39,596 bases of DNA from Macrostomum lignano (GCA_002269645.1 NIVC01002765.1:1-39596); one strand, 5' to 3'; counted from the stretch's first letter, positions 1 to 39,458 are shown. Numbers and translations are program-made. Notes: generated by a model not told the origin, from the letters alone.

Positions 1-307
1 CCAGATTTTAGCGCTGAGGATCTGGTAGCTGAAGGTAAAGGTGACCCCAAAACGTATCTGAAAGCATTGAAACGCACATTGAAATGGCATCCGATGTATG
101 ACTTTTACTTTTATCATTTTTAGCCGGAAATGACAGCGTGCAGTCTATTAATGGGTGAGTGACGAAATCTATACGTGTACATTTACATTATACCTCGTGT
201 AGTCATTCGTGAATGAATGCTCCTCTGTGATGGACCCGCAGCAGCGCTAGCGCGCACGAGCAGCACGTCGATGTCACCCGACAGAACGAGCTGAGATTTT
301 TCTCAGG
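1..307 (+). other. Possible exon/intron fragments of an unidentified eukaryotic gene (candidate exons 1-34, 124-154, 245-307)
   Basis: Donor-like GTAAAG (35), GTGAGT (155) and GTAAG (308); acceptor-like T-rich tract ending TTTTTAG (123) and GCAG (244). Joining gives phase-compatible, stop-free PDFSAEDLVAE-A-GNDSVQSIN-G-ASAHEQHVDVTRQNELRFFS. The exons are short, so chance compatibility is substantial, and no homology was recognised. Confidence 0.3.
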
Positions 308-438
308 GTAAGATTTTACAGATGCATTGGATAGAGCAGCAGCAGGACATTGGAAGCCAGTGTCGGATCTGGAGATTCTCGATAGAGGGTTGGAGGTGAC
401 AAAGTCTTGGGCCGGTCGAAGGACCTAACGCTCGTATT

Positions 439-496
439 GGTAGCTTCCTAGCTCCATCTGTGGGTAGCTCCATGATGACCTGTGGGTAGCTCCATC
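439..496. repeat. Degenerate/truncated left-edge monomers of the array
   Basis: Seen directly: GGTAGCTTCC-TAGCTCCATC-TGTGGGTAGCTCCAT-GATGACC. These are partial units with internal deletions preceding the first intact monomer. Confidence 0.85.
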
Positions 497-3400
497 GAAT
501 GACCTGTGGGTAGCTCCATCGAATGACCTGTGGGTAGCTCCATCGAATGACCTGTGGGTAGCTCCATCGGATGAACTGAGGGTAGCTCCATCGATGAACC
601 TGAGGGTAGCTCCATCGATGAACCTGAGGGTAGCTCCATCGATGAACCTGAGGGTAGCTCCATTGGATGAACCTGAGGGTAGCTCCATCGGATGAATCTG
701 AGGGTAGCTCCATCGGATGAACCTGAGGTAGCTCCATCGGATGAATCTGAGGGTAGCTCCATCGAATGACCTGTGGGTAGCTCCATCGAATGACCTGTGG
801 GTAGCTCCATCGAATGACCTGTGGGTAGCTCCATCGAATGACCTGTGGGTAGCTCCATCGAATGACCTGTGGGTAGCTCCATCGATGAACCTGAGGGTAG
901 CTCCATCGATGACCTGAGGGTAGCTCCATCGGATGAACCTGAGGGTAGCTCCATCGGATGAACCTGAGGGTAGCTCCATGGATGAACCTGAGGGTAGCTC
1001 CATCGGATGAATCTGAGGGTAGCTCCATCGGATGAACCTGAGGGTAGCTCCATCGATGAATCTGAGGGTAGCTCCATCGAATGACCTGTGGGTAGCTCCA
1101 TCGAATGACCTGTGGGTAGCTCCATCGAATGACCTGTGGGTAGCTCCATCGAATGACCTGTGGGTAGCTCCATCGAATGACCTGTGGGTAGCTCCATCGA
1201 ATGACCTGTGGGTAGCTCCATCGAATGACCTGTGGGTAGCTCCATCGAATGACCTGTGGGTAGCTCCATCGAATGACCTGTGGGTAGCTCCATCGGATGA
1301 ACCTGAGGGTAGCTCCATCGAATGAACCTGAGGGTAGCTCCATCGGATGAACCTGAGGGTAGCTCCATCGGATGAACCTGAGGGTAGCTCCATTGGATGA
1401 ACCTGGGTAGCTCCATCGGATGAATCTGAGGGTAGCTCCATCGATGAACCTGAGGGTAGCTCCATCGGATGAACCTGAGGGTAGCTCCATCGAATGACCT
1501 GTGGGTAGCTCCATCGAATGACCTGTGGGTAGCTCCATCGAATGACCTGTGGGTAGCTCCATCGAATGACCTGTGGGTAGCTCCATCGAATGACCTGTGG
1601 GTAGCTCCATCGGATGAACCTGAGGGTAGCTCCATCGGATGAACCTGAGGGTAGCTCCATCGGATGAACCTGAGGGTAGCTCCATCGGATGAACCTGAGG
1701 GTAGCTCCATCGGATGACCTGTGAGTAGCTCCATCGAATGACCTGTGGTAGCTCCATCGAATGACCTGTGGTAGCTCCATCGAATGACCTGTGGGTAGCT
1801 CCATCGAATGACCTGTGGGTAGCTCCATCGAATGACCTGTGGGTAGCTCCATCGAATGACCTGTGGGTAGCTCCATCGAATGACCTGTGGGTAGCTCCAT
1901 CGAATGAACCTGAGGGTAGCTCCATCGATGAACCTGAGGGTAGCTCCATCGGATGAACCTGAGGGTAGCTCCATCGGATGAACCTGAGGGTAGCTCCATC
2001 GATGAACCTGAGGGTAGCTCCATCGGATGAATCTGTGAGTAGCTCCATCGAATGACCTGTGGGTAGCTCCATCGATGAACCTGAGGGTAGCTCCATCGAT
2101 GAACCTGAGGGTAGCTCCATCGATGAACCTGAGGGTAGCTCCATCGATGAATCTGAGGGTAGCTCCATGATGACCTGTGGGTAGCTCCATCGATGACCTG
2201 TGGGTAGCTCCATCGAATGACCTGTGGGTAGCTCCATCGAATGACCTGTGGGTAGCTCCATCGAATGACCTGTGGGTAGCTCCATCGAATGACCTGTGGG
2301 TAGCTCCATCGAATGACCTGTGGGTAGCTCCATCGAATGACCTGTGGGTAGCTCCATCGAATGACCTGTGGGTAGCTCCATCGAATGACCTGTGGGTAGC
2401 TCCATCGAATGACCTGTGGGTAGCTCCATCGATGACCTGTGGGTAGCTCCATCGAATGAACCTGAGGGTAGCTCCATCGATGAACCTGAGGGTAGCTCCA
2501 TCGGATGAACCTGAGGGTAGCTCCATCGGATGAACCTGAGGGTAGCTCCATCGATGACCTGTGGGTAGCTCCATCGAATGACCTGTGGGTAGCTCCATCG
2601 AATGACCTGTGGGTAGCTCCATCGAATGACCTGTGGGTAGCTCCATCGAATGACCTGTGGGTAGCTCCATCGAATGACCTGTGGGTAGCTCCATCGAATG
2701 ACCTGTGGGTAGCTCCATCGAATGACCTGTGGGTAGCTCCATCGAATGACCTGTGGGTAGCTCCATCGAATGACCTGTGGGTAGCTCCATCGATGAACCT
2801 GAGGGTAGCTCCATCGATGAACCTGAGGGTAGCTCCATCGGATGAACCTGAGGGTAGCTCCATCGGATGAACCTGAGGGTAGCTCCATCGGATGAACCTG
2901 AGGGTAGCTCCATCGGATGAACCTGAGGGTAGCTCCATCGGATGAATCTGAGGGTAGCTCCATCGATGAACCTGAGGGTAGCTCCATCGAATGACCTGTG
3001 GGTAGCTCCATCGAATGACCTGTGGGTAGCTCCATCGAATGACCTGTGGGTAGCTCCATCGAATGACCTGTGGGTAGCTCCATCGAATGACCTGTGGGTA
3101 GCTCCATCGATGAACCTGAGGGTAGCTCCATCGATGAACCTGAGGGTAGCTCCATCGATGAACCTGAGGGTAGCTCCATCGGATGAACCTGAGGGTAGCT
3201 CCATCGGATGAACCTGAGGGTAGCTCCATCGATGAACCTGAGGGTAGCTCCATCGATGAACCTGAGGGTAGCTCCATCGATGACCTGTGGGTAGCTCCAT
3301 CGAATGACCTGTGGGTAGCTCCATCGAATGACCTGTGGGTAGCTCCATCGAATGACCTGTGGGTAGCTCCATCGAATGACCTGTGGGTAGCTCCATCGAA

Positions 3401-6400
3401 TGACCTGTGGGTAGCTCCATCGAATGACCTGTGGGTAGCTCCATCGAATGACCTGTGGGTAGCTCCATCGAATGACCTGTGGGTAGCTCCATCGATGAAC
3501 CTGTGGGTAGCTCCATCGAATGAACCTGAGGGTAGCTCCATCGATGAACCTGAGGGTAGCTCCATCGGATGAACCTGAGGGTAGCTCCATCGATGAACCT
3601 GAGGGTAGCTCCATCGGATGAACCTGAGGGTAGCTCCATCGATGAACCTGAGGGTAGCTCCATCGATGAACCTGAGGGTAGCTCCATCGAATGACCTGAG
3701 GGTAGCTCCATCGAATGACCTGTGGGTAGCTCCATCGAATGACCTGTGGGTAGCTCCATCGAATGACCTGTGGGTAGCTCCATCGAATGACCTGTGGGTA
3801 GCTCCATCGAATGACCTGTGGGTAGCTCCATCGATGAACCTGAGGGTAGCTCCATCGATGAACCTGAGGGTAGCTCCATCGATGAACCTGAGGGTAGCTC
3901 CATCGATGAACCTGAGGGTAGCTCCATCGATGACCTGTGGGTAGCTCCATCGAATGACCTGTGGGTAGCTCCATCGAATGACCTGTGGGTAGCTCCATCG
4001 AATGACCTGTGGGTAGCTCCATCGAATGACCTGTGGGTAGCTCCATCGAATGACCTGTGGGTAGCTCCATCGAATGACCTGTGGGTAGCTCCATCGAATG
4101 ACCTGTGGGTAGCTCCATCGAATGAACCTGAGGGTAGCTCCATCGATGAACCTGAGGGTAGCTCCATCGGATGAACCTGAGGGTAGCTCCATCGATGAAC
4201 CTGAGGGTAGCTCCATCGATGAACCTGAGGGTAGCTCCATCGATGAACCTGTGGGTAGCTCCATCGATGAACCTGAGGGTAGCTCCATCGATGAACCTGA
4301 GGGTAGCTCCATCGATGAACCTGAGGGTAGCTCCATCGATGAACCTGAGGGTAGCTCCATGAGGGTAGCTCCATCGATGAACCTGTGGGTAGCTCCATCG
4401 ATGACCTGTGGGTAGCTCCATCGAATGACCTGTGGGTAGCTCCATCGAATGACCTGTGGGTAGCTCCATCGAATGACCTGTGGGTAGCTCCATCGAATGA
4501 CCTGTGGGTAGCTCCATCGAATGACCTGTGGGTAGCTCCATCGAATGACCTGTGGGTAGCTCCATCGAATGACCTGTGGGTAGCTCCATCGAATGACCTG
4601 TGGGTAGCTCCATCGAATGACCTGTGGGTAGCTCCATCGAATGACCTGTGGGTAGCTCCATCGATGAACCTGAGGGTAGCTCCATCGATGAACCTGAGGG
4701 TAGCTCCATCGGATGAACCTGAGGGTAGCTCCATCGGATGAACCTGAGGGTAGCTCCATCGGATGACCTGTGGGTAGCTCCATCGAATGACCTGTGGGTA
4801 GCTCCATCGAATGACCTGTGGGTAGCTCCATCGAATGACCTGTGGGTAGCTCCATCGAATGACCTGTGGGTAGCTCCATCGAATGACCTGTGGGTAGCTC
4901 CATCGAATGACCTGTGGGTAGCTCCATCGAATGACCTGTGGGTAGCTCCATCGATGAACCTGAGGGTAGCTCCATCGGATGAACCTGAGGGTAGCTCCAT
5001 CGATGAACCTGAGGGTAGCTCCATCGGATGAACCTGAGGGTAGCTCCATCGGATGAACCTGAGGGTAGCTCCATCGGATGAACCTGAGGGTAGCTCCATC
5101 GGATGAACCTGAGGGTAGCTCCATCGAATGACCTGTGGGTAGCTCCATCGAATGACCTGTGGGTAGCTCCATCGAATGACCTGTGGGTAGCTCCATCGAA
5201 TGACCTGTGGGTAGCTCCATCGAATGACCTGTGGGTAGCTCCATCGAATGACCTGTGGGTAGCTCCATCGAATGACCTGTGGGTAGCTCCATCGAATGAC
5301 CTGTGGGTAGCTCCATCGATGAACCTGAGGGTAGCTCCATCGGATGAACCTGAGGGTAGCTCCATCGATGAACCTGAGGGTAGCTCCATCGGATGAACCT
5401 GAGGGTAGCTCCATCGATGAACCTGAGGGTAGCTCCATCGATGAACCTGAGGGTAGCTCCATCGATGAACCTGAGGGTAGCTCCATCGATGAACCTGAGG
5501 GTAGCTCCATCGAATGACCTGTGGGTAGCTCCATCGAATGACCTGTGGGTAGCTCCATCGAATGACCTGTGGGTAGCTCCATCGAATGACCTGTGGGTAG
5601 CTCCATCGAATGACCTGTGGGTAGCTCCATCGAATGACCTGTGGGTAGCTCCATCGAATGACCTGTGGGTAGCTCCATCGAATGACCTGTGGGTAGCTCC
5701 ATCGAATGACCTGTGGGTAGCTCCATCGAATGACCTGTGGGTAGCTCCATCGAATGACCTGTGGGTAGCTCCATCGAATGAACCTGGGTAGCTCCATCGA
5801 TGAACCTGAGGGTAGCTCCATCGATGAACCTGAGGGTAGCTCCATCGATGAACCTGAGGGTAGCTCCATCGATGAACCTGAGGGTAGCTCCATCGATGAA
5901 CCTGAGGGTAGCTCCATCGATGACCTGTGGGTAGCTCCATCGAATGACCTGAGGGTAGCTCCATCGATGACCTGAGGGTAGCTCCATCGATGAACCTGAG
6001 GGTAGCTCCATCGATGAACCTGAGGGTAGCTCCATCGATGAACCTGAGGGTAGCTCCATCGATGACCTGTGGGTAGCTCCATCGATGACCTGTGGGTAGC
6101 TCCATCGATGACCTGTGGGTAGCTCCATCGAATGACCTGTGGGTAGCTCCATCGAATGACCTGTGGGTAGCTCCATCGATGAACCTGAGGGTAGCTCCAT
6201 CGATGAACCTGAGGGTAGCTCCATCGGATGAACCTGAGGGTAGCTCCATCGATGAACCTGAGGGTAGCTCCATCGATGACCTGTGGGTAGCTCCATCGAA
6301 TGACCTGTGGGTAGCTCCATCGAATGACCTGTGGGTAGCTCCATCGAATGACCTGTGGGTAGCTCCATCGAATGACCTGTGGGTAGCTCCATCGAATGAC

Positions 6401-9400
6401 CTGTGGGTAGCTCCATCGAATGACCTGTGGGTAGCTCCATCGATGAACCTGAGGGTAGCTCCATCGATGAACCTGAGGGTAGCTCCATCGGATGAACCTG
6501 AGGGTAGCTCCATCGGATGAACCTGAGGGTAGCTCCATCGGATGAACCTGAGGGTAGCTCCATCGGATGAACCTGAGGGTAGCTCCATCGGATGAATCTG
6601 AGGGTAGCTCCATCGAATGACCTGTGGGTAGCTCCATCGAATGACCTGTGGGTAGCTCCATCGAATGACCTGTGGGTAGCTCCATCGAATGACCTGTGGG
6701 TAGCTCCATCGAATGACCTGTGGGTAGCTCCATCGAATGACCTGTGGGTAGCTCCATCGAATGACCTGTGGGTAGCTCCATCGAATGACCTGTGGGTAGC
6801 TCCATCGATGAACCTGAGGGTAGCTCCATCGGATGAACCTGAGGGTAGCTCCATCGGATGAACCTGAGGGTAGCTCCATCGGATGAACCTGAGGGTAGCT
6901 CCATCGGATGACCTGGGTAGCTCCATCGAATGACCTGTGGGTAGCTCCATCGAATGACCTGTGGGTAGCTCCATCGAATGACCTGTGGGTAGCTCCATCG
7001 AATGACCTGTGGGTAGCTCCATCGAATGACCTGTGGGTAGCTCCATCGAATGACCTGTGGGTAGCTCCATCGAATGACCTGTGGGTAGCTCCATCGATGA
7101 CCTGTGGGTAGCTCCATCGATGACCTGAGGGTAGCTCCATCGATGAACCTGAGGGTAGCTCCATCGGATGAACCTGAGGGTAGCTCCATCGGATGAACCT
7201 GAGGGTAGCTCCATCGGATGAACCTGAGGGTAGCTCCATCGGATGAACCTGAGGGTAGCTCCATCGAATGACCTGTGGGTAGCTCCATCGAATGACCTGT
7301 GGGTAGCTCCATCGAATGACCTGTGGGTAGCTCCATCGAATGACCTGTGGGTAGCTCCATCGAATGACCTGTGGGTAGCTCCATCGAATGACCTGTGGGT
7401 AGCTCCATCGAATGACCTGTGGGTAGCTCCATCGAATGACCTGTGGGTAGCTCCATCGAATGACCTGTGGGTAGCTCCATCGATGAACCTGAGGGTAGCT
7501 CCATCGATGAACCTGAGGGTAGCTCCATCGATGAACCTGAGGGTAGCTCCATCGGATGAACCTGAGGGTAGCTCCATCGATGAACCTGAGGGTAGCTCCA
7601 TCGATGAACCTGAGGGTAGCTCCATCGATGAACCTGAGGGTAGCTCCATCGATGAACCTGAGGGTAGCTCCATCGAATGACCTGTGGGTAGCTCCATCGA
7701 ATGACCTGTGGGTAGCTCCATCGAATGACCTGTGGGTAGCTCCATCGAATGACCTGTGGGTAGCTCCATCGAATGACCTGTGGGTAGCTCCATCGATGAA
7801 CCTGAGGGTAGCTCCATCGATGAACCTGAGGGTAGCTCCATCGATGAACCTGAGGGTAGCTCCATCGGATGAACCTGAGGGTAGCTCCATCGGATGAACC
7901 TGAGGGTAGCTCCATCGATGAACCTGAGGGTAGCTCCATCGATGAACCTGTGGGTAGCTCCATCGAATGACCTGTGGGTAGCTCCATCGAATGACCTGTG
8001 GGTAGCTCCATCGAATGACCTGTGGGTAGCTCCATCGAATGACCTGTGGGTAGCTCCATCGAATGACCTGTGGGTAGCTCCATCGAATGACCTGTGGGTA
8101 GCTCCATCGAATGACCTGTGGGTAGCTCCATCGAATGACCTGTGGGTAGCTCCATCGATGAACCTGAGGGTAGCTCCATCGGATGAACCTGAGGGTAGCT
8201 CCATCGATGAACCTGAGGGTAGCTCCATCGATGAACCTGAGGGTAGCTCCATCGATGAACCTGTGGGTAGCTCCATCGAATGACCTGTGGGTAGCTCCAT
8301 CGAATGACCTGTGGGTAGCTCCATCGAATGACCTGTGGGTAGCTCCATCGAATGACCTGTGGGTAGCTCCATCGAATGACCTGTGGGTAGCTCCATCGAA
8401 TGACCTGTGGGTAGCTCCATCGAATGACCTGTGGGTAGCTCCATCGATGACCTGTGGGTAGCTCCATCGATGACCTGTGGGTAGCTCCATCGATGAACCT
8501 GAGGGTAGCTCCATCGGATGAACCTGAGGGTAGCTCCATCGGATGAACCTGAGGGTAGCTCCATCGGATGAACCTGAGGGTAGCTCCATCGGATGACCTG
8601 AGGGTAGCTCCATCGAATGACCTGTGGGTAGCTCCATCGAATGACCTGTGGGTAGCTCCATCGAATGACCTGTGGGTAGCTCCATCGAATGACCTGTGGG
8701 TAGCTCCATCGAATGACCTGTGGGTAGCTCCATCGATGACCTGTGGGTAGCTCCATCGATGAACCTGAGGGTAGCTCCATCGATGAACCTGAGGGTAGCT
8801 CCATCGGATGAACCTGAGGGTAGCTCCATCGATGACCTGGGTAGCTCCATCGATGACCTGTGGGTAGCTCCATCGAATGACCTGTGGTAGCTCCATCGAA
8901 TGACCTGTGGGTAGCTCCATCGAATGACCTGTGGGTAGCTCCATCGAATGACCTGTGGGTAGCTCCATCGAATGACCTGTGGGTAGCTCCATCGAATGAC
9001 CTGTGGGTAGCTCCATCGAATGACCTGTGGGTAGCTCCATCGATGACCTGAGGGTAGCTCCATCGATGACCTGAGGGTAGCTCCATCGATGACCTGAGGG
9101 TAGCTCCATCGATGAACCTGAGGGTAGCTCCATCGATGACCTGTGGGTAGCTCCATCGAATGACCTGAGGGTAGCTCCATCGAATGACCTGAGGGTAGCT
9201 CCATCGATGACCTGAGGGTAGCTCCATCGGATGAACCTGAGGGTAGCTCCATCGGATGAACCTGAGGGTAGCTCCATCGATGACCTGTGGGTAGCTCCAT
9301 CGATGACCTGTGGGTAGCTCCATCGAATGACCTGTGGGTAGCTCCATCGAATGACCTGTGGGTAGCTCCATCGAATGACCTGTGGGTAGCTCCATCGAAT

Positions 9401-27400: not shown

Positions 27401-30400
27401 CTCCATCGAATGACCTGTGGGTAGCTCCATCGAATGAACCTGTGGGTAGCTCCATCGGATGAACCTGAGGGTAGCTCCATCGATGAACCTGAGGGTAGCT
27501 CCATCGGATGAACCTGAGGGTAGCTCCATCGATGAACCTGAGGGTAGCTCCATCGATGACCTGTGGGTAGCTCCATCGAATGACCTGTGGGTAGCTCCAT
27601 CGAATGACCTGTGGGTAGCTCCATCGAATGACCTGTGGGTAGCTCCATCGAATGACCTGTGGGTAGCTCCATCGAATGACCTGTGGGTAGCTCCATCGAT
27701 GAACCTGTGGGTAGCTCCATCGATGAACCTGAGGGTAGCTCCATCGATGAACCTGAGGGTAGCTCCATCGATGAACCTGAGGGTAGCTCCATCGGATGAA
27801 CCTGAGGGTAGCTCCATCGATGAACCTGAGGGTAGCTCCATCGATGAATCTGAGGGTAGCTCCATCGAATGACCTGTGGGTAGCTCCATCGAATGACCTG
27901 TGGGTAGCTCCATCGAATGACCTGTGGGTAGCTCCATCGAATGACCTGTGGGTAGCTCCATCGAATGACCTGTGGGTAGCTCCATCGAATGACCTGGGTA
28001 GCTCCATCGATGAACCTGAGGGTAGCTCCATCGATGAACCTGAGGGTAGCTCCATCGATGACCTGTGGGTAGCTCCATCGATGAACCTGGGTAGCTCCAT
28101 CGATGACCTGTGGTAGCTCCATCGAATGACCTGTGGGTAGCTCCATCGAATGACCTGTGGGTAGCTCCATCGAATGACCTGTGGGTAGCTCCATCGAATG
28201 ACCTGTGGGTAGCTCCATCGAATGACCTGTGGGTAGCTCCATCGAATGACCTGTGGGTAGCTCCATCGAATGACCTGTGGGTAGCTCCATCGAATGACCT
28301 GTGGGTAGCTCCATCGAATGAACCTGAGGGTAGCTCCATCGATGAACCTGAGGGTAGCTCCATCGATGAACCTGAGGGTAGCTCCATCGATGAACCTGAG
28401 GGTAGCTCCATCGATGAACCTGAGGGTAGCTCCATCGATGAACCTGGTAGCTCCATCGAATGACCTGTGGGTAGCTCCATCGATGAACCTGAGGGTAGCT
28501 CCATCGATGAACCTGGGTAGCTCCATCGATGAACCTGAGGGTAGCTCCATCGATGAACCTGAGGGTAGCTCCATCGATGACCTGTGGGTAGCTCCATCGA
28601 GACCTGTGGGTAGCTCCATCGAATGACCTGTGGGTAGCTCCATCGAATGACCTGTGGGTAGCTCCATCGAATGACCTGTGGGTAGCTCCATCGAATGACC
28701 TGTGGGTAGCTCCATCGAATGACCTGTGGGTAGCTCCATCGAATGACCTGTGGGTAGCTCCATCGATGAACCTGAGGGTAGCTCCATCGATGAACCTGAG
28801 GGTAGCTCCATCGATGAACCTGAGGGTAGCTCCATCGATGAACCTGAGGGTAGCTCCATCGATGACCTGTGGGTAGCTCCATCGAATGACCTGTGGGTAG
28901 CTCCATCGAATGACCTGTGGGTAGCTCCATCGAATGACCTGTGGGTAGCTCCATCGAATGACCTGTGGGTAGCTCCATCGATGAACCTGAGGGTAGCTCC
29001 ATCGATGAACCTGAGGGTAGCTCCATCGATGAACCTGAGGGTAGCTCCATCGATGAACCTGAGGGTAGCTCCATCGATGACCTGTGGGTAGCTCCATCGA
29101 GACCTGTGGGTAGCTCCATCGAATGACCTGTGGGTAGCTCCATCGAATGACCTGTGGGTAGCTCCATCGAATGACCTGTGGGTAGCTCCATCGAATGACC
29201 TGTGGGTAGCTCCATCGAATGACCTGAGGGTAGCTCCATCGATGACCTGAGGGTAGCTCCATCGATGAACCTGAGGGTAGCTCCATCGATGAACCTGAGG
29301 GTAGCTCCATCGATGAACCTGAGGGTAGCTCCATCGATGAACCTGAGGGTAGCTCCATCGATGAACCTGAGGGTAGCTCCATCGATGAACCTGAGGGTAG
29401 CTCCATCGATGACCTGTGGGTAGCTCCATCGAATGACCTGTGGGTAGCTCCATCGAATGACCTGTGGGTAGCTCCATCGAATGACCTGTGGGTAGCTCCA
29501 TCGAATGACCTGTGGGTAGCTCCATCGAATGACCTGTGGGTAGCTCCATCGAATGACCTGTGGGTAGCTCCATCGAATGACCTGTGGGTAGCTCCATCGA
29601 TGAACCTGAGGGTAGCTCCATCGATGAACCTGAGGGTAGCTCCATCGATGAACCTGAGGGTAGCTCCATCGGATGAACCTGAGGGTAGCTCCATCGGATG
29701 AACCTGAGGGTAGCTCCATCGATGAACCTGAGGGTAGCTCCATCGATGAACCTGAGGGTAGCTCCATCGAATGACCTGTGGGTAGCTCCATCGAATGACC
29801 TGTGGGTAGCTCCATCGAATGACCTGTGGGTAGCTCCATCGAATGACCTGTGGGTAGCTCCATCGAATGACCTGTGGGTAGCTCCATCGAATGACCTGTG
29901 GGTAGCTCCATCGAATGACCTGTGGGTAGCTCCATCGAATGACCTGTGGGTAGCTCCATCGATGAACCTGAGGGTAGCTCCATCGATGAACCTGAGGGTA
30001 GCTCCATCGATGAACCTGAGGGTAGCTCCATCGATGAACCTGAGGGTAGCTCCATCGATGAACCTGAGGGTAGCTCCATCGATGAACCTGAGGGTAGCTC
30101 CATCGATGAACCTGAGGGTAGCTCCATCGATGAACCTGAGGGTAGCTCCATCGAATGACCTGTGGGTAGCTCCATCGAATGACCTGTGGGTAGCTCCATC
30201 GAATGACCTGTGGGTAGCTCCATCGAATGACCTGTGGGTAGCTCCATCGAATGACCTGTGGGTAGCTCCATCGAATGACCTGTGGGTAGCTCCATCGAAT
30301 GACCTGTGGGTAGCTCCATCGAATGACCTGTGGGTAGCTCCATCGAATGACCTGTGGGTAGCTCCATCGAGACCTGTGGGTAGCTCCATCGAATGACCTG

Positions 30401-33400
30401 TGGGTAGCTCCATCGAATGAACCTGAGGGTAGCTCCATCGATGAACCTGAGGGTAGCTCCATCGATGAACCTGAGGGTAGCTCCATCGATGAACCTGAGG
30501 GTAGCTCCATCGATGAACCTGAGGGTAGCTCCATCGATGAACCTGAGGGTAGCTCCATCGATGAACCTGTGGTAGCTCCATCGAATGACCTGTGGGTAGC
30601 TCCATCGATGACCTGAGGGTAGCTCCATCGATGAACCTGAGGGTAGCTCCATCGATGAACCTGAGGGTAGCTCCATCGATGAACCTGAGGGTAGCTCCAT
30701 CGATGACCTGTGGGTAGCTCCATCGAGACCTGTGGGTAGCTCCATCGAATGACCTGTGGGTAGCTCCATCGAATGACCTGTGGGTAGCTCCATCGAATGA
30801 CCTGTGGGTAGCTCCATCGATGAACCTGAGGGTAGCTCCATCGGATGAACCTGAGGGTAGCTCCATCGGATGAACCTGAGGGTAGCTCCATCGGATGAAC
30901 CTGAGGGTAGCTCCATCGATGACCTGTGGGTAGCTCCATCGAATGACCTGTGGGTAGCTCCATCGAATGACCTGTGGGTAGCTCCATCGAATGACCTGTG
31001 GGTAGCTCCATCGAATGACCTGTGGGTAGCTCCATCGAATGACCTGTGGGTAGCTCCATCGAATGACCTGTGGGTAGCTCCATCGATGAACCTGAGGGTA
31101 GCTCCATCGATGAACCTGAGGGTAGCTCCATCGATGAACCTGAGGGTAGCTCCATCGGATGAACCTGAGGGTAGCTCCATCGGATGAACCTGAGGGTAGC
31201 TCCATCGGATGAACCTGAGGGTAGCTCCATCGATGAACCTGAGGGTAGCTCCATCGAATGACCTGTGGGTAGCTCCATCGAATGACCTGTGGGTAGCTCC
31301 ATCGAATGACCTGTGGGTAGCTCCATCGAATGACCTGTGGGTAGCTCCATCGAATGACCTGTGGGTAGCTCCATCGAATGACCTGTGGGTAGCTCCATCG
31401 AATGACCTGTGGGTAGCTCCATCGAATGACCTGTGGGTAGCTCCATCGATGAACCTGAGGGTAGCTCCATCGGATGAACCTGAGGTAGCTCCATCGGATG
31501 AACCTGAGGGTAGCTCCATCGGATGAACCTGAGGGTAGCTCCATCGGATGACCTGTGGGTAGCTCCATCGAATGACCGTGGGTAGCTCCATCGAATGACC
31601 TGTGGTAGCTCCATCGAATGACCTGTGGGTAGCTCCATCGAATGACCTGTGGGTAGCTCCATCGAATGACCTGTGGGTAGCTCCATCGAATGACCTGTGG
31701 GTAGCTCCATCGAATGACCTGTGGGTAGCTCCATCGATGACCTGTGGGTAGCTCCATCGATGAACCTGAGGGTAGCTCCATCGATGAACCTGAGGGTAGC
31801 TCCATCGGATGAACCTGAGGGTAGCTCCATCGGATGAACCTGAGGGTAGCTCCATCGGATGAACCTGAGGGTAGCTCCATCGGATGAATCTGAGGGTAGC
31901 TCCATCGAATGACCTGTGGGTAGCTCCATCGAATGACCTGTGGGTAGCTCCATCGAATGACCTGTGGGTAGCTCCATCGAATGACCTGTGGGTAGCTCCA
32001 TCGAATGACCTGTGGGTAGCTCCATCGAATGACCTGTGGGTAGCTCCATCGAATGACCTGTGGGTAGCTCCATCGAATGACCTGTGGGTAGCTCCATCGA
32101 ATGACCTGTGGGTAGCTCCATCGATGAACCTGAGGGTAGCTCCATCGGATGAACCTGAGGGTAGCTCCATCGGATGAACCTGAGGGTAGCTCCATCGGAT
32201 GAACCTGAGGGTAGCTCCATCGATGAACCTGAGGGTAGCTCCATCGATGAATCTGAGGGTAGCTCCATCGATGAACCTGAGGGTAGCTCCATCGATGAAT
32301 CTGAGGGTAGCTCCATCGAATGACCTGTGGGTAGCTCCATCGAATGACCTGTGGGTAGCTCCATCGAATGACCTGTGGGTAGCTCCATCGAATGACCTGT
32401 GGGTAGCTCCATCGAATGACCTGTGGGTAGCTCCATCGAATGACCTGTGGGTAGCTCCATCGAATGACCTGTGGGTAGCTCCATCGATGAACCTGAGGTA
32501 GCTCCATCGGATGAACCTGAGGGTAGCTCCATCGATGAACCTGAGGGTAGCTCCATCGATGACCTGTGGGTAGCTCCATCGAATGACCGTGGGTAGCTCC
32601 ATCGAATGACCTGTGGGTAGCTCCATCGAATGACCTGTGGGTAGCTCCATCGAATGACCTGTGGGTAGCTCCATCGAATGACCTGTGGGTAGCTCCATCG
32701 ATGAACCTGAGGGTAGCTCCATCGATGAACCTGAGGGTAGCTCCATCGATGAACCTGAGGGTAGCTCCATCGATGAACCTGAGGGTAGCTCCATCGGATG
32801 ACCTGTGGGTAGCTCCATCGAATGACCTGTGGGTAGCTCCATCGAATGACCTGTGGGTAGCTCCATCGAATGACCTGTGGGTAGCTCCATCGAATGACCT
32901 GTGGGTAGCTCCATCGAATGACCTGTGGGTAGCTCCATCGAATGACCTGTGGGTAGCTCCATCGATGAACCTGAGGGTAGCTCCATCGATGAACCTGAGG
33001 GTAGCTCCATCGATGAACCTGAGGGTAGCTCCATCGATGAACCTGAGGGTAGCTCCATCGGATGAACCTGAGGGTAGCTCCATCGGATGAACTGAGGGTA
33101 GCTCCATCGGATGAACCTGAGGGTAGCTCCATCGAATGACCTGTGGGTAGCTCCATCGAATGACCTGTGGGTAGCTCCATCGAATGACCTGTGGGTAGCT
33201 CCATCGAATGACCTGTGGGTAGCTCCATCGAATGACCTGTGGGTAGCTCCATCGAATGACCTGTGGGTAGCTCCATCGAATGACCTGTGGGTAGCTCCAT
33301 CGAATGACCTGTGGGTAGCTCCATCGAATGACCTGTGGGTAGCTCCATCGATGAACCTGAGGGTAGCTCCATCGGATGAACCTGAGGGTAGCTCCATCGG

Positions 33401-36400
33401 ATGAATCTGAGGGTAGCTCCATCGGATGAACCTGAGGGTAGCTCCATCGATGACCTGTGGGTAGCTCCATCGAATGACCGTGGGTAGCTCCATCGAATGA
33501 CCTGTGGGTAGCTCCATCGAATGACCTGTGGGTAGCTCCATCGAATGACCTGTGGGTAGCTCCATCGAATGACCTGTGGGTAGCTCCATCGAATGACCTG
33601 TGGGTAGCTCCATCGAATGACCTGTGGGTAGCTCCATCGATGACCTGTGGGTAGCTCCATCGATGAACCTGAGGGTAGCTCCATCGATGAACCTGAGGGT
33701 AGCTCCATCGGATGAACCTGAGGGTAGCTCCATCGGATGAACCTGAGGGTAGCTCCATCGATGAACCTGAGGTAGCTCCATCGGATGAACTGAGGGTAGC
33801 TCCATCGAATGACCTGTGGGTAGCTCCATCGAATGACCTGTGGGTAGCTCCATCGAATGACCTGTGGGTAGCTCCATCGAATGACCTGTGGGTAGCTCCA
33901 TCGAATGACCTGTGGGTAGCTCCATCGAATGACCTGTGGGTAGCTCCATCGAATGACCTGTGGGTAGCTCCATCGAATGACCTGTGGGTAGCTCCATCGA
34001 ATGACCTGTGGGTAGCTCCATCGATGAACCTGAGGGTAGCTCCATCGGATGAACCTGAGGGTAGCTCCATCGATGAACCTGAGGGTAGCTCCATCGGATG
34101 AACCTGAGGGTAGCTCCATCGGATGAACCTGAGGGTAGCTCCATCGATGAATCTGAGGGTAGCTCCATCGATGAACCTGAGGGTAGCTCCATCGATGAAC
34201 CTGAGGGTAGCTCCATCGAATGACCTGTGGGTAGCTCCATCGAATGACCTGTGGGTAGCTCCATCGAATGACCTGTGGGTAGCTCCATCGAATGACCTGT
34301 GGGTAGCTCCATCGAATGACCTGTGGGTAGCTCCATCGAATGACCTGTGGGTAGCTCCATCGAATGACCTGTGGGTAGCTCCATCGATGAACCTGAGGTA
34401 GCTCCATCGGATGAATCTGAGGGTAGCTCCATCGGATGAACCTGAGGGTAGCTCCATCGATGACCTGTGGGTAGCTCCATCGAATGACCGTGGGTAGCTC
34501 CATCGAATGACCTGTGAGTAGCTCCATCGAATGACCTGTGGGTAGCTCCATCGAATGACCTGTGGGTAGCTCCATCGAATGACCTGTGGGTAGCTCCATC
34601 GAATGACCTGTGGGTAGCTCCATCGAATGACCTGTGGGTAGCTCCATCGAGACCTGTGGGTAGCTCCATCGAATGACCTGTGGGTAGCTCCATCGAATGA
34701 ACCTGAGGGTAGCTCCATCGATGAACCTGAGGGTAGCTCCATCGATGAACCTGAGGGTAGCTCCATCGATGAACCTGAGGGTAGCTCCATCGATGAACCT
34801 GAGGGTAGCTCCATCGATGAACCTGAGGGTAGCTCCATCGATGAATCTGTGAGTAGCTCCATCGAATGACCTGTGGGTAGCTCCATCGATGAATCTGAGG
34901 GTAGCTCCATCGATGAACCTGTGGGTAGCTCCATCGATGAACTGAGGGTAGCTCCATCGGATGAACCTGAGGGTAGCTCCATGAGACCTGTGGGTAGCTC
35001 CATCGAGACCTGTGGGTAGCTCCATCGAATGACCTGTGGGTAGCTCCATCGAATGACCTGTGGGTAGCTCCATCGAATGACCTGTGGGTAGCTCCATCGA
35101 ATGACCTGTGGGTAGCTCCATCGAATGACCTGTGGGTAGCTCCATCGAATGACCTGTGGGTAGCTCCATCGATGAACCTGAGGGTAGCTCCATCGATGAA
35201 CCTGAGGGTAGCTCCATCGGATGAACCTGAGGGTAGCTCCATCGATGAACCTGAGGGTAGCTCCATCGATGACCTGTGGGTAGCTCCATCGAATGACCTG
35301 TGGGTAGCTCCATCGAATGACCTGTGGGTAGCTCCATCGAATGACCTGTGGGTAGCTCCATCGAATGACCTGTGGGTAGCTCCATCGATGAACCTGAGGG
35401 TAGCTCCATCGATGAACCTGAGGGTAGCTCCATCGATGAACCTGAGGGTAGCTCCATCGATGAATCTGAGGGTAGCTCCATGATGACCTGTGGGTAGCTC
35501 CATCGAGACCTGTGGGTAGCTCCATCGAATGACCTGTGGGTAGCTCCATCGAATGACCTGTGGGTAGCTCCATCGAATGACCTGTGGGTAGCTCCATCGA
35601 TGAACCTGAGGGTAGCTCCATCGATGAACCTGAGGGTAGCTCCATCGGATGAACCTGAGGGTAGCTCCATCGATGAACCTGAGGGTAGCTCCATCGATGA
35701 ACCTGAGGGTAGCTCCATCGATGAACCTGAGGGTAGCTCCATCGATGAACCTGAGGGTAGCTCCATCGAATGACCTGTGGGTAGCTCCATCGAATGACCT
35801 GTGGGTAGCTCCATCGAATGACCTGTGGGTAGCTCCATCGAATGACCTGTGGGTAGCTCCATCGAATGACCTGTGGGTAGCTCCATCGAATGACCTGTGG
35901 GTAGCTCCATCGAATGACCTGTGGGTAGCTCCATCGAATGACCTGTGGGTAGCTCCATCGATGAACCTGAGGGTAGCTCCATCGGATGAACCTGAGGTAG
36001 CTCCATCGGATGAATCTGAGGGTAGCTCCATCGGATGAACCTGAGGGTAGCTCCATCGGATGACCTGGGTAGCTCCATCGAATGACCTGGGTAGCTCCAT
36101 CGAATGACCTGTGGTAGCTCCATCGAATGACCTGTGGGTAGCTCCATCGAATGACCTGTGGGTAGCTCCATCGAATGACCTGTGGGTAGCTCCATCGAAT
36201 GACCTGTGGGTAGCTCCATCGAATGACCTGTGGGTAGCTCCATCGATGACCTGTGGGTAGCTCCATCGATGAACCTGAGGGTAGCTCCATCGATGAACCT
36301 GAGGGTAGCTCCATCGATGAACCTGAGGGTAGCTCCATCGGATGAACCTGAGGGTAGCTCCATCGGATGAACCTGAGGGTAGCTCCATCGGATGAATCTG

Positions 36401-39094
36401 AGGGTAGCTCCATCGATGAACCTGTGGGTAGCTCCATCGAATGACCTGTGGGTAGCTCCATCGAATGACCTGTGGGTAGCTCCATCGAATGACCTGTGGG
36501 TAGCTCCATCGAATGACCTGTGGGTAGCTCCATCGAATGACCTGTGGGTAGCTCCATCGAATGACCTGTGGGTAGCTCCATCGAATGACCTGTGGGTAGC
36601 TCCATCGAATGACCTGTGGGTAGCTCCATCGAATGACCTGTGGGTAGCTCCATCGATGACCTGAGGGTAGCTCCATCGATGAACCTGAGGGTAGCTCCAT
36701 CGATGAACCTGAGGGTAGCTCCATCGGATGAACCTGAGGGTAGCTCCATCGGATGAACCTGAGGGTAGCTCCATCGATGAACCTGAGGGTAGCTCCATCG
36801 AATGAACCTGAGGGTAGCTCCATCGATGAACCTGAGGGTAGCTCCATCGAATGACCTGTGGGTAGCTCCATCGAATGACCTGTGGGTAGCTCCATCGAAT
36901 GACCTGTGGGTAGCTCCATCGAATGACCTGTGGGTAGCTCCATCGAATGACCTGTGGGTAGCTCCATCGAATGACCTGTGGGTAGCTCCATCGAATGACC
37001 TGTGGGTAGCTCCATCGATGAACCTGAGGTAGCTCCATCGATGAACCTGAGGGTAGCTCCATCGGATGAACCTGAGGGTAGCTCCATCGATGACCTGTGG
37101 GTAGCTCCATCGAATGACCTGTGGGTAGCTCCATCGAATGACCTGTGGTAGCTCCATCGAATGACCTGTGGGTAGCTCCATCGAATGACCTGTGGGTAGC
37201 TCCATCGAATGACCTGTGGGTAGCTCCATCGAATGACCTGTGGGTAGCTCCATCGAATGACCTGTGGTAGCTCCATCGATGACCTGTGGGTAGCTCCATC
37301 GAATGACCTGTGGGTAGCTCCATCGAATGAACCTGAGGGTAGCTCCATCGATGAACCTGAGGGTAGCTCCATCGATGAACCTGAGGGTAGCTCCATCGAT
37401 GAACCTGAGGGTAGCTCCATCGGATGAACCTGAGGGTAGCTCCATCGATGAACCTGAGGGTAGCTCCATCGATGAACCTGTGAGTAGCTCCATCGAATGA
37501 CCTGTGGGTAGCTCCATCGATGAACCTGAGGGTAGCTCCATCGAACCTGGGTAGCTCCATCGATGAATCTGAGGGTAGCTCCATCGATGACCTGTGGGTA
37601 GCTCCATCGAGACCTGTGGGTAGCTCCATCGATGACCTGTGGGTAGCTCCATCGAATGACCTGTGGGTAGCTCCATCGAATGACCTGTGGGTAGCTCCAT
37701 CGAATGACCTGTGGGTAGCTCCATCGAATGACCTGTGGGTAGCTCCATCGAATGACCTGTGGGTAGCTCCATCGAATGACCTGTGGGTAGCTCCATCGGA
37801 TGAACCTGAGGGTAGCTCCATCGATGACCTGTGGGTAGCTCCATCGAATGACCTGTGGGTAGCTCCATCGAATGACCTGTGGGTAGCTCCATCGAATGAC
37901 CTGTGGGTAGCTCCATCGAATGACCTGTGGGTAGCTCCATCGAATGACCTGGGTAGCTCCATCGAATGAACCTGAGGGTAGCTCCATCGGATGAACCTGA
38001 GGGTAGCTCCATCGATGAACCTGAGGGTAGCTCCATCGATGAACCTGAGGGTAGCTCCATCGGATGAACCTGAGGGTAGCTCCATCGGATGAACCTGAGG
38101 GTAGCTCCATCGATGAATCTGAGGGTAGCTCCATCGAATGACCTGTGGGTAGCTCCATCGAATGACCTGTGGGTAGCTCCATCGAATGACCTGTGGGTAG
38201 CTCCATCGAATGACCTGTGGGTAGCTCCATCGAATGACCTGTGGGTAGCTCCATCGAATGACCTGTGGGTAGCTCCATCGAATGACCTGTGGGTAGCTCC
38301 ATCGAATGACCTGTGGGTAGCTCCATCGAATGACCTGTGGGTAGCTCCATCGAATGACCTGTGGGTAGCTCCATCGAATGACCTGTGGGTAGCTCCATCG
38401 AATGACCTGTGGGTAGCTCCATCGATGAACCTGAGGGTAGCTCCATCGATGAACCTGAGGGTAGCTCCATCGATGAACCTGTGAGGTAGCTCCATCGATG
38501 AACCTGAGGGTAGCTCCATCGATGACCTGTGGGTAGCTCCATCGAATGACCTGTGGGTAGCTCCATCGAATGACCTGTGGTAGCTCCATCGAATGACCTG
38601 TGGGTAGCTCCATCGAATGACCTGTGGGTAGCTCCATCGAATGACCTGTGGGTAGCTCCATCGAATGACCTGTGGGTAGCTCCATCGAATGACCTGGGTA
38701 GCTCCATCGAATGACCTGTGGGTAGCTCCATCGAGGGACCTGTGGGTAGCTCCATCGAATGACCTGTGGGTAGCTCCATCGAATGAACCTGAGGGTAGCT
38801 CCATCGGATGAACCTGAGGGTAGCTCCATCGATGAACCTGAGGTAGCTCCATCGGATGAACCTGAGGGTAGCTCCATCGGATGACCTGAGGGTAGCTCCA
38901 TCGGATGAATCCTGAGTAGCTCCATCGGATGAACCTGAGGGTAGCTCCATCGGATGAACCTGAGGGTAGCTCCATCGGATGAATCTGAGGTAGTTCCATC
39001 GATGAATCTGAGGGTAGCTCCAATGAGGGACCTGTGGGTAGCTCCATCGAGGACTGTGGTAGCTCCATCGAATGACCTGTTGGTAGTACCATTC
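449..39094. repeat. Giant interstitial tandem (satellite/minisatellite) array of 23-25 bp monomers, two monomer classes in alternating blocks
   Basis: Seen directly. The invariant core GGGTAGCTCCATC recurs every 23-25 bp from ~462 to ~39070 with no spacers or unique insertions and always in the same orientation. T-type is GAATGACCTGTGGGTAGCTCCATC; A-type is G(G)ATGAACCTGAGGGTAGCTCCATC. Monomer GC is 13/24 to 14/25 (54-56%), higher than the AT-richer right flank. Confidence 0.99.
20984..37000. repeat. Higher-order super-repeat, period ~9.74-9.77 kb (best-resolved copy pair ~21-27 kb vs ~30.7-36.8 kb)
   Basis: Rare variant monomers recur at fixed offsets: 23705/33476, 24715/34486, 24924/34695 and 25212/34983 (all 9,771 bp); 25080/34849 (9,769); 21828/31574 (9,746); 20984/30725 (9,741); 27053/36800 (9,747). 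Positions were read by eye; copy boundaries are not defined. Confidence 0.75.
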
Positions 39095-39113
39095 AGTCTT
39101 GTGAGTATTTCCA
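38730..39113. repeat. Increasingly diverged right-edge monomers of the array
   Basis: Seen directly: variants not noticed in the interior, including GAGGGACCTGTGGG (~38733, ~39025), GAATCCTGAGTAGC (~38887), GTAGTTCCATC (~38990), GAGGACTGTGGT (~39049) and the last unit GAATGACCTGTTGGTAGTACCATTC (39070-39094). A relic TGTGAGTATTTCCA (39100-39113) matches the variant TGTGAGTAGCTCCA at 12/14. Confidence 0.85.
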
Positions 39114-39458
39114 GGGTTAGCCGCTGAGAGTTTTTGGTATTTAACTGAAATTCTAAGTCATTATTTAGAATCGATTAATAATTAAAGTGAATTGCAATCC
39201 TACGAAGTTGAGTTAGTTTGTTAAGCTACGACGTGCGTAAAACTCGTGTCTAGCAGTGCGCTATCTATCCAGCCACATTTTACCAGCAACTAGACATGTG
39301 GCAAGTCTACAGTACGCTTTCAGTTGCAATCTAAAAGCTAGACAGAAGTGTGGGAGAGCAGGTTCATCATATTTTATGCTTGCTCTAGAATCGTTTCTCT
39401 TTATTTTTTACTGTGCCAAGCAATTTTTTTGCAATCTATTAAGTAATGTATAGGAGGT

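What the first reader, a model, noticed from the sequence alone, without database searches (positions are those of the whole stretch)
2165..37000. Hidden ~9.3-9.8 kb super-repeat: the array is about four copies of a ~9.7 kb unit
Seen: at least seven independent rare-variant pairs lie 9,769-9,771 bp apart. These are GACCGTGGG 23705/33476 and 24715/34486; GAATGAACC 24924/34695; GTGAGTAG 25080/34849; GAGACC 25212/34983; and GAACTGAG vs GAATCTGAG 23632/33403, 33787/24016 and 25691/35462. Offsets shrink leftwards: 9,741-9,747 (21-22 and 27 kb), ~9,530-9,556 (17497/27053, 17810/27339) and ~9,294 (2165/11459). Array length divided by period is about 4. Inference: either recent large unequal-crossover or rolling-circle amplifications of a 9.7 kb segment, or an assembler traversing the same repeat several times. 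The degenerate end units do not recur internally, so it is not a simple whole-array multiplication.
Basis: partly seen in the sequence, partly recalled or inferred. Interest (0 to 1): 0.7.

Follow-up and report, generated by a model that had tools for sequence, protein, structure and literature searches.

The report
Irregular super-units in a 24-bp satellite
The window is one 38.6 kb non-coding array of a 24-bp repeat. Its real 9.7 kb self-similarity is the distance between two similar 6.4 kb blocks separated by a shortened 3.4 kb copy, not a unit repeated four times, and this is ordinary satellite-DNA behaviour.

Summary
A roughly 9.7 kb lag is the strongest long-range self-similarity in the array. 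Positions 19680-26153 and 29422-35950 align at 98.0% identity, against 92.7% for random registers.

The idea of four copies of a 9.7 kb unit fails. The 9-10 kb lag ranks first only for windows at about 19.7-24.5 kb, and there are no clear peaks at twice or three times that lag.

The array has several levels:
- 1,609 monomers in two main types, arranged in alternating runs.
- 131 cassettes of about 13 monomers each.
- Modules of about 1.3-1.7 kb, which I call Jα, M, β and β′.
- Super-units of variable length. Six successive Jα starts lie 7.1, 4.7, 3.2, 6.4 and 3.4 kb apart.

Every observed lag is a sum of these spacings: 9.75 kb = 6.36 + 3.36, and 9.5 kb = 3.16 + 6.36.

The 9.75 kb partners are not consistently each other's closest relatives, so this is not one clean recent duplication. 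The longest exact repeat is 617 bp, and the two blocks differ at 68 of 282 aligned monomer positions, which argues against an assembler loop.

The best reading is repeated out-of-register unequal exchange plus local conversion in a eukaryote-like satellite. The source organism was not identified. Interest is low.

The parts
458..39086 (+). Tandem array of the 24-bp unit CTGTGGGTAGCTCCATCGAATGAC. About 1,609 monomers in a single orientation, with 50 monomer types.
   Evidence: TRF reports period 24, 1609.4 copies and 96% matches. Anchor-based decomposition gives A 775x, B 384x, C 189x and D 72x. GC skew is constant.
19680..26034 (+). Super-unit U1 (modules Jα-M-M-β′), 265 monomers, 6,355 bp. 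Left partner of the 9.75 kb pair.
   Evidence: Cassette table, chains at lag 405-409, 98.0% identity to its partner and 97.8% for U1 against U2.
26035..29398 (+). Shortened super-unit UΔ (Jα, partial M, β′), 141 monomers, 3,364 bp. It equals U with about 120-124 monomers skipped.
   Evidence: Chains at lag 141 and lag 265. 24484-28070 against 27858-31438 aligns at 98.0%. The one-gap model gives 94.5-95.8% identity.
29399..35758 (+). Super-unit U2 (Jα-M-M-β′), 265 monomers, 6,360 bp. Right partner of the 9.75 kb pair.
35759..38126 (+). Partial super-unit (M lacking its first cassette, then β′), 99 monomers.
   Evidence: Chains at lags 518-520, 188-191 and 109, cassettes 119-126, and the one-gap fit.
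38127..39086 (+). Degenerate, variant-rich right end of the array.
   Evidence: Cassettes 127-130. 62% of the last 8 monomers are outside types A-D.
4752..11857 (+). Left super-unit Jα-M-β-β, 296 monomers, 7.1 kb.
   Evidence: Chain at lag 291-295, 3583-7907 against 10664-14895, 95.7% identity. Cassettes 14-36.
11858..16522 (+). Super-unit Jα-M-β, 194 monomers, 4.7 kb. Relative to the previous unit, one β is missing.
   Evidence: Lag 194-198 chain. One-gap fit skips 102 monomers.
16523..19679 (+). Super-unit Jα-M, 131 monomers, 3.2 kb.
   Evidence: Lag 131 chain. 97.6% identity to the first 129 monomers of U1.
450..4751 (+). Left edge of the array (two β-like blocks), variant-rich. It shares rare variants with the right third.
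   Evidence: 22% of monomers are outside types A-D. Lag ~1474 chain.
303..39092 (-). Spurious 12,929-aa open reading frame. The minus strand of the monomer has no stop codon in any of the three frames.
   Evidence: ORF list. Stop counts per frame, and 384 of 1,608 monomers with a length not divisible by 3.
1..449 (.). Unique left flank. It holds the tail of a 40-codon open frame (1-123), followed by stop-rich sequence.
   Evidence: No homologue found.
39087..39596 (.). Unique right flank, stop-rich in all frames.
   Evidence: No match.

Best explanation
The window is a non-coding, eukaryote-like minisatellite or satellite array with an irregular hierarchy, not a fixed large period.

The levels are:
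- Two main 24-bp monomer types, A (..AATGACCTGT..) and B/C (..(G)ATGAACCTGA..), which form alternating runs.
- Cassettes of about 13 monomers, each an A-run followed by a B/C-run.
- Recurring modules of about five cassettes: Jα (~1.5 kb), M (~1.65 kb) and β/β′ (~1.3-2.2 kb).
- Super-units, each starting with Jα, of 296, 194, 131, 265, 141 and 265 monomers.

The module order along the array is: β β | Jα M β β | Jα M β | Jα M | Jα M M β′ | Jα m β′ | Jα M M β′ | M β′ | degenerate end.

The 9.75 kb offset is the distance between the two full Jα-M-M-β′ units (6.36 kb each), which are separated by a 3.36 kb internally shortened copy.

Inferred mechanism: repeated out-of-register unequal exchange (sister-chromatid or homologue), with breakpoints at module level, duplicating or deleting blocks of 2.4-7 kb. 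Slippage changes run lengths. Local gene conversion spreads variants between neighbouring modules, for example 'PNK' in U1 and 'DN' in U2. The centre of the array is the most homogenised, and both ends keep older variants.

What is shown: the structure, the identities and the lags. What is inferred: the recombination mechanism and the eukaryotic origin.
For: - Array and monomer types.
- 131 cassettes with a recurring length pattern 15,16,17,6,9,14,12,15,17,10.
- Jα starts at monomers 179, 475, 669, 800, 1065 and 1206. Most of the collinear chains found against a reversed-array control are differences of these or of the M/β′ positions: 291-295, 620, 1027, 194-198, 732-735, 131, 395-398, 538, 265, 405-409, 141, 329, 78, 109, 518. 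The lag 551-556 chain was not assigned to a module pair, and the lag ~1474 chain reflects similarity between the two array ends..
- Base-level identity of chains is 95.7-98.9%, against about 91-93% in random registers.
- Module matrices: Jα1206 is 98.9% identical to Jα179 and Jα1065 but only 97.4% to its 9.75 kb partner Jα800. M940 is 99.3% to M1269 (lag 329) but 97.5% to its partner M1347.
- One-gap models relate shorter units to longer ones.
- Variant fraction is 22% and 19-23% (62% in the last 8 monomers) at the two ends, and 3-4% in the middle.
- Non-coding: 384 of 1,608 monomers are not multiples of 3, the three frames are used equally, and cassette lengths are uniform mod 3.
- The same pattern (homogenised centre, variant ends, higher-order structure attributed to unequal exchange and conversion) is described for the Drosophila Rsp locus (PMC5411766).
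Against: - The source organism and chromosomal context are unknown, so the eukaryotic origin is inferred only from non-coding flanks and the nature of the array.
- No reads were available, so assembly correctness rests on internal evidence alone.
- The module boundaries and names are my own parse.
- Alternative histories give the same present structure: a 3.4 kb duplication or a 3 kb deletion, or a ~9.6 kb tandem duplication followed by replacement.
- The array-wide lag profile does peak at ~9.7 kb, and there are weak bumps near 19.5 and 29 kb.
Confidence: 0.8

Rival explanations
1. One fairly recent tandem duplication of a ~9.6-9.8 kb segment (about 16.5-26.0 kb copied to 26.0-35.8 kb), later blurred by conversion and by replacement of about 55-65 monomers in the first third.
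For: - Lag 395-398 for monomers 660-750 and lag 405-409 for 800-1071 lie nearly on one diagonal and together span about one period.
- This is the strongest lag-profile peak.
- 98.0% identity over 6.5 kb.
Against: - The diagonal breaks at monomers 720-780, where M731 faces β′1151 (scores 0.04-0.18).
- 'Orthologous' modules are not mutual nearest neighbours.
- The lag 141 and lag 265 chains are equally strong, at 98.0% identity.
- Monomer-type identity across the pair is only 76%.
Confidence: 0.12
2. Assembly artefact: the assembler walked the same ~10 kb repeat several times, so the true locus is shorter.
For: Long pure arrays are error-prone in assembly, and no read data were available to exclude this.
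Against: - The longest exact repeat in the window is 617 bp. 99.9% of 600-mers and 100% of 1,000-mers in the array are unique.
- The 9.75 kb partners differ by 48 monomer substitutions and 20 monomer indels in 282 columns.
- The rare variants recur in conserved local contexts, so they are not random consensus errors.
- Only 10 singleton monomer types occur in about 1,450 interior monomers.
Confidence: 0.04
3. One reading: a regular super-repeat of ~9.3-9.8 kb present about four times, possibly produced by rolling-circle amplification.
For: - Array length divided by 9.7 kb is about 4.
- Isolated pairs occur at 9.29 and 9.53 kb further left.
- Weak bumps appear near 19.5 and 29 kb.
Against: - For windows at 0-16 kb the best lags are 7.1, 4.7, 14.9 and 24.6 kb, and the 9-10 kb band ranks 3rd to 35th, apart from one weak first place at window 420 (score 0.27).
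- The 9,294 bp pair consists of two different variants.
- The rare-variant histogram has no excess at lags of 800-820 or 1200-1220 monomers.
- Super-unit lengths vary from 131 to 296 monomers.
Confidence: 0.02
4. The array is the coding sequence of a giant repetitive protein, read from the minus-strand ORF of 12,929 aa.
For: Minus-strand ORFs of 12,929, 12,825 and 9,162 aa exist.
Against: - All three minus-strand frames are stop-free in every major monomer.
- 384 frame-shifting monomers (21, 22, 23 or 25 bp) put the three frames to equal use (557/544/507).
- Cassette lengths are uniform mod 3.
- A protein search with the translation found nothing.
Confidence: 0.01

Closest known systems
Complex satellite loci with a homogenised centre, variant ends and irregular higher-order structure, for example the Drosophila melanogaster Responder (Rsp) locus (PMC5411766)
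   Same: - Two related monomer variants occur in a patterned arrangement.
- Low-copy variants concentrate at the array ends, and the middle is the most uniform.
- Large internal blocks are similar to one another, which is attributed to unequal exchange and gene conversion.
   Different: - The unit here is 24 bp rather than ~120 bp.
- The array is 38.6 kb rather than hundreds of kb.
- There are no transposon insertions.
- The organism and chromosomal location are unknown.
Regular higher-order repeats of primate alpha satellite
   Same: Structure above the monomer level. Copies of the larger unit are more alike (96-99%) than out-of-register comparisons (~92.7%).
   Different: No fixed multimer length: super-units range from 131 to 296 monomers. 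Monomer types differ by only 1-3 edits rather than 20-40%. The units are runs of like monomers, not ordered sets of distinct monomers.
Nested or variable-length tandem repeats (NTR/VLTR; NTRFinder, PMC3273788) and 'mosaic' tandem repeats (PMC10118999)
   Same: Two or more tandem motifs are interspersed in runs of variable length, of the form (A^n (B/C)^m)k.
   Different: The published definition expects clearly distinct motifs, usually of different length. Here the motifs are near-identical variants of one unit, and two further levels of organisation lie above the cassette.
Human hypervariable minisatellites mapped by variant-repeat (MVR) coding (from my own knowledge: Jeffreys et al. 1991)
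   Same: Unit length of tens of bp. Two or three variant types have an interspersion pattern that records the history of unequal exchange and conversion.
   Different: This array is roughly ten times longer or more than typical minisatellite alleles. No population data are available to show polarity or instability.

Membership tests
Non-coding tandem satellite / minisatellite array | Head-to-tail copies of one short unit in one orientation | tested here: met
   TRF reports period 24, 1609.4 copies and 96% matches. GC skew is constant.
Non-coding tandem satellite / minisatellite array | No reading frame is maintained | tested here: met
   384 of 1,608 monomers are not multiples of 3. Frames are used 557/544/507. 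Cassette lengths mod 3 are 50/44/37. The translation has no protein homologue.
Non-coding tandem satellite / minisatellite array | Eukaryotic nuclear origin and chromosomal location (centromeric, subtelomeric or other) | not testable with these tools
   The flanks have no match in any collection searched.
Regular higher-order repeat (alpha-satellite type) | A fixed-length multimer repeated along the array, giving peaks at 1x, 2x, 3x the period | tested here: not met
   Super-unit lengths are 296, 194, 131, 265, 141 and 265 monomers. The rare-variant histogram has no peaks at 800 or 1200 monomers. The 9-10 kb band is top only for windows 800-900 and 1000.
Regular higher-order repeat (alpha-satellite type) | Copies of the large unit are much more alike than monomers within it | tested here: inconclusive
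   Module copies are 96-99% identical against 92.7% out of register. However, the monomer types themselves differ by only 1-3 edits.
Nested / variable-length tandem repeat (NTR/VLTR) | Two or more tandem motifs interspersed in runs of variable length | tested here: met
   There are 131 A-family runs (mean 7.1 monomers) alternating with 130 B/C-family runs (mean 5.2).
Nested / variable-length tandem repeat (NTR/VLTR) | The motifs are distinct (edit distance above a threshold; PMC3273788) | tested here: inconclusive
   A and B differ by three edits in 24 bp, and C equals B plus one G. Whether that passes depends on the threshold chosen.
Single recent segmental (tandem) duplication or rolling-circle amplification of ~9.7 kb | Adjacent copies of equal length whose corresponding parts are each other's closest relatives | tested here: not met
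   Jα1206 is closest to Jα179 and Jα1065 (98.9%), not to Jα800 (97.4%). M940 is closest to M1269 (99.3%), not to M1347 (97.5%). The diagonal breaks at monomers 720-780.
Assembly expansion artefact | Identical or near-identical long copies | tested here: not met
   The longest exact repeat is 617 bp and 99.9% of 600-mers are unique. The partners differ at 68 of 282 aligned monomer columns.
Assembly expansion artefact | Read depth or spanning reads inconsistent with the assembled length | not testable with these tools
   No reads are available.

The most novel reading that the evidence does not exclude
The near-invariant 14-bp core GGGTAGCTCCATCG (intact in 97-99% of monomers) may be a protein-binding site. 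On that reading the array is a functional satellite, for example a centromeric or other chromatin-organising satellite, in an undescribed eukaryote. The homogenised centre and module-level layering would then record successive expansions, as in human centromeres. A less likely alternative is that the source is a prokaryote or a virus, where a 38.6 kb non-coding 24-bp array would be unprecedented.
Probability: 0.08. Interest if true: 0.5.

Novelty: new member of a known kind. Interest (0 to 1): 0.2.

Why it matters
The main value is as a corrected annotation.
- The window contains no gene. The 12,929-aa open frame is an artefact of a stop-free repeat.
- The 'hidden 9.7 kb period' should not be used to infer copy number or misassembly.

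The array is a clean, fully resolved example of how unequal exchange at several scales builds an irregular hierarchy from a 24-bp unit. Its variant map (50 monomer types, 131 cassettes) would make a good marker for studying array turnover, if the organism is identified and other individuals are sequenced. Beyond that, it adds nothing new in kind to what is known of satellite DNA.

Tried and rejected
- **Exact k-mer offset histograms (k = 30-60).** These gave no 9.7 kb peak, because 1-bp length differences between monomers smear the offsets. I replaced them with monomer-level analyses.
- **Stringent local self-alignment.** It gave only short hits, so I replaced it with fitting alignments scored against a reversed-array control.
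- **First lag profile.** It had a bookkeeping bug (start-based bins left empty) and was redone.
- **TRF with maximum period 2000.** It reported only the 24-bp period.
- **Cheap-gap base-level alignment of the short unit to the long unit.** It fragmented the gap, so I replaced it with an explicit one-gap model.
- **Exact-pattern scans for relatives or the source.** The monomer found nothing in viral, genome or metagenome collections.
- **Looser 3 x TAGCTCCAT pattern.** It returned 138 loci. All those inspected are unrelated minisatellites that share the 9-mer by chance.
- **Other searches that found nothing:**
  - protein searches with the array translation and with the 40-aa flank frame;
  - exact-protein look-up of the right-flank ORF;
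  - Rfam;
  - phage and plasmid BLAST;
  - flank scans of viral contigs;
  - full-text search for the monomer sequence.
- **CENP-B-box and G-quadruplex readings of the monomer.** I considered these by eye and dropped them. The monomer has no CGGG at the required spacing, and it has only one G3 tract per 24 bp.


Full report
**What the window is**

TRF finds a single array at 458-39086: period 24, 1609.4 copies, 96% matches, consensus CTGTGGGTAGCTCCATCGAATGAC. GC content (0.54) and GC skew (about +0.09) are flat across the array, so it has one orientation and no foreign insertions. Only about 450 bp on the left and about 510 bp on the right are unique.

I split the array at the anchor AGCTCCA. 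This gives 1,608 monomers of 50 types:
- A, AGCTCCATCGAATGACCTGTGGGT, 775 copies.
- B, ..CGATGAACCTGAGGGT, 384 copies.
- C, which is B plus one G (25 bp), 189 copies.
- D, which is A minus one A (23 bp), 72 copies.
- 46 rarer types.

The 14-bp core GGGT|AGCTCCATCG is intact in 97-99% of monomers. All variation lies in the 8-11 bp between cores.

**It is not coding**

The minus strand carries open frames of 12,929, 12,825 and 9,162 aa. This is only because the minus strand of every major monomer lacks stops in all three frames. Of the 1,608 monomers, 384 have lengths not divisible by three. The three frames are occupied about equally (557/544/507), and cassette lengths are uniform mod 3. A protein search with the translation found nothing.

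**Checking the observation**

GACCGTGGG occurs seven times, at 21828, 23705, 24715, 31574, 32585, 33476 and 34486. The cited pairs are 9,769-9,771 bp apart.

Evidence that the ~9.7 kb lag is real:
- A lag histogram of same-type rare monomers has its highest bin at 400-409 monomers, with 19 pairs against 7.6 expected (z 4.3). It shows no excess at 800 or 1,200 monomers.
- An indel-tolerant lag profile used 60-monomer windows fitted along the array and scored by rarity. Its strongest long-range peak is at 396-419 monomers (0.22 against an overall mean of 0.116).
- At base level, 19680-26153 aligns to 29422-35950 at 98.0% identity. Twenty-five random-register controls gave a mean of 92.7% and a maximum of 94.8% (z 8.2).

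Two caveats apply. At single-lag resolution the count at 408±1 monomers (11 pairs) is the largest but only equals the family-wise 95th percentile of label permutations. Lags of 43, 88, 266, 329, 78 and 109 monomers have 9-10 pairs each.

**Why it is not 'four copies of 9.7 kb'**

Fitting alignments, filtered against a reversed-array control, give many collinear diagonals. The main lags, in monomers, are:
- 291-295 (7.05 kb; 3.6-7.9 kb against 10.7-14.9 kb)
- 620 (14.9 kb)
- 1027 (24.6 kb)
- 194-198 (4.7 kb)
- 131 (3.15 kb)
- 395-398 (9.5 kb)
- 538 (12.9 kb)
- 265 (6.36 kb)
- 405-409 (9.7-9.8 kb)
- 141 (3.37 kb)
- 329 (7.87 kb)
- 518 (12.4 kb)
- 78 and 109

Their base-level identities are 95-99%. 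The 9-10 kb band is the best-ranked lag only for windows starting at monomers 800-900 and 1000, plus one weak case at 420. For the first 16 kb it ranks 3rd to 35th. With windows 660-1100 excluded, its mean (0.16-0.18) is no higher than the peaks near 7.1 and 11.7 kb.

**The actual architecture**

A-family and B/C-family monomers alternate in runs, with 131 A-family runs (mean 7.1 monomers) and 130 B/C-family runs (mean 5.2). This gives 131 cassettes with a median of 13 monomers, and an autocorrelation peak at 15 monomers.

The sequence of cassette lengths shows a recurring pattern, 15,16,17,6,9 | 14,12,15,17,10. I call the first five cassettes Jα (~1.5 kb) and the next five M (~1.65 kb). The blocks built around a very short 'landmark' cassette I call β, or β′ in the right half.

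Jα starts at monomers 179, 475, 669, 800, 1065 and 1206, which are bp 4752, 11858, 16523, 19680, 26035 and 29399. The spacings are 296, 194, 131, 265 and 141 monomers.

The array reads: β β | Jα M β β | Jα M β | Jα M | Jα M M β′ | Jα m β′ | Jα M M β′ | M β′ | degenerate end.

Most of the lags listed above are differences between Jα, M or β′ positions. The exceptions are a lag 551-556 chain that I could not assign and the lag ~1474 similarity between the two array ends. In particular:
- 406 = 265 + 141, the 9.75 kb lag.
- 388 = 296 + 92, a β-to-β shift.

So the 'shrinking offset' is three unrelated pairings, not one drifting diagonal.

One-gap models relate the shorter units to the longer ones:
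- 26035-29398 equals a full unit with 120-124 monomers skipped (94.5-95.8% identity).
- 16523-19679 equals the first 129 monomers of U1 (97.6%).
- 11858-16522 equals 4752-11857 with 102 monomers skipped (93.7%).

**Not one clean duplication, and not an assembler loop**

The two 6.4 kb units (19680-26034 and 29399-35758) are 97.8-98.0% identical at base level. Monomer by monomer, only 214 of 282 aligned columns carry the same type. There are 48 substitutions, many of them B/C or single-base length variants, and 20 monomer indels.

Corresponding modules are not mutual nearest relatives:
- Jα1206 is 98.9% identical to Jα179 and Jα1065, but 97.4% to its partner Jα800.
- M940 is 99.3% to M1269, but 97.5% to its partner M1347.

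The signature 'PNK' occupies two module junctions in U1, while 'DN' occupies three in U2. This points to local conversion within each unit.

The longest exact repeat anywhere in the window is 617 bp. In the array, 99.9% of 600-mers and all 1,000-mers are unique. Rare variants recur in conserved contexts, and interior singleton types are few (10 in about 1,450 monomers). The sequence therefore looks accurate and uniquely assemblable from long reads. Only read data could settle this.

**Mechanism (inferred)**

Variable-length super-units related by module-sized gains and losses are the expected products of repeated out-of-register unequal exchange, with slippage and gene conversion. So are variable run lengths, locally spread variants, a homogeneous middle and variant-rich ends. 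The fraction of monomers outside types A-D is 3-4% at monomers 500-700, against 22% at the left end and 19-23% near the right end, rising to 62% in the last 8 monomers. This is the classical Smith/Dover picture. The same features are described for the Drosophila Rsp locus (PMC5411766). Rolling-circle amplification would give equal-length, near-identical units, which are not seen.

**Comparison with known kinds**

- The alternation of two motifs in runs of variable length matches the 'nested / variable-length tandem repeat' definition (PMC3273788). The motifs here, though, are close variants of one unit.
- It does not meet the defining feature of a regular higher-order repeat, which is a fixed multimer length.
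- It most resembles complex satellites and long minisatellites with variant-repeat structure.

**Origin**

The source is unknown. Nothing related was found in the viral, prokaryotic-genome or metagenome collections, in phage or plasmid records, in Rfam, in the protein database or in the literature. The loose-pattern hits are unrelated repeats. The stop-rich flanks and the nature of the array suggest a eukaryote. That is an inference.

**Verdict**

The interpretation as a four-copy 9.7 kb super-repeat is not supported. What is present is an ordinary, if nicely resolved, hierarchical satellite array. Interest is 0.2, and I class it as a new member of a known kind.

Noticed in passing
window 303-39092 (- strand); also 448-38925, 11462-38950 and 425-11272 (- strand): Giant open reading frames of up to 12,929 aa span the array, because the minus strand of every major monomer is stop-free in all three frames. 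A gene caller would predict a spurious giant repetitive protein here.
   Followed up: yes
window 450-2200 compared with 23300-38900: Rare monomer variants S, R, Q, J, H and K occur at the far left end and again in the right third, but are nearly absent from the middle. For example, BBBHS occurs at 2065-2161 and 35378-35474. This suggests the middle was homogenised or expanded later, with older variants left at both sides.
   Followed up: partly
window 1-123 and ~95-125: The left flank begins with the last 40 codons of an open frame (PDFSAEDLVAEGKGDPKTYLKALKRTLKWHPMYDFYFYHF*). The stretch GTATGAC...TTTTTAG looks like a very short intron. No homologue was found, so it may not be a gene.
   Followed up: partly
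window 4322-4398 (monomer 'h', 14 bp) and 450-465 (monomer 'b', 16 bp): Truncated monomers: a 14-bp unit AGCTCCATGAGGGT inside the array, which TRF reports as a local 14/38-bp period, and a 16-bp unit at the left boundary. These may be footprints of exchange or deletion breakpoints within a repeat.
   Followed up: no
whole array: The 14-bp core GGGTAGCTCCATCG is intact in 97-99% of monomers, and all variation is confined to the 8-11 bp between cores. B-type monomers contain the palindrome ATCGAT. The cause could be a binding site or simply homogenisation.
   Followed up: partly
L013, L014, L031, L042 (WLWD01 contigs); L017, L022/L065, L046, L060: The loose 9-mer pattern scan pulled out several unrelated minisatellite arrays in metagenome contigs, with units of about 22-26 bp that contain TAGCTCCAT. 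They share only the 9-mer with this array.
   Followed up: partly
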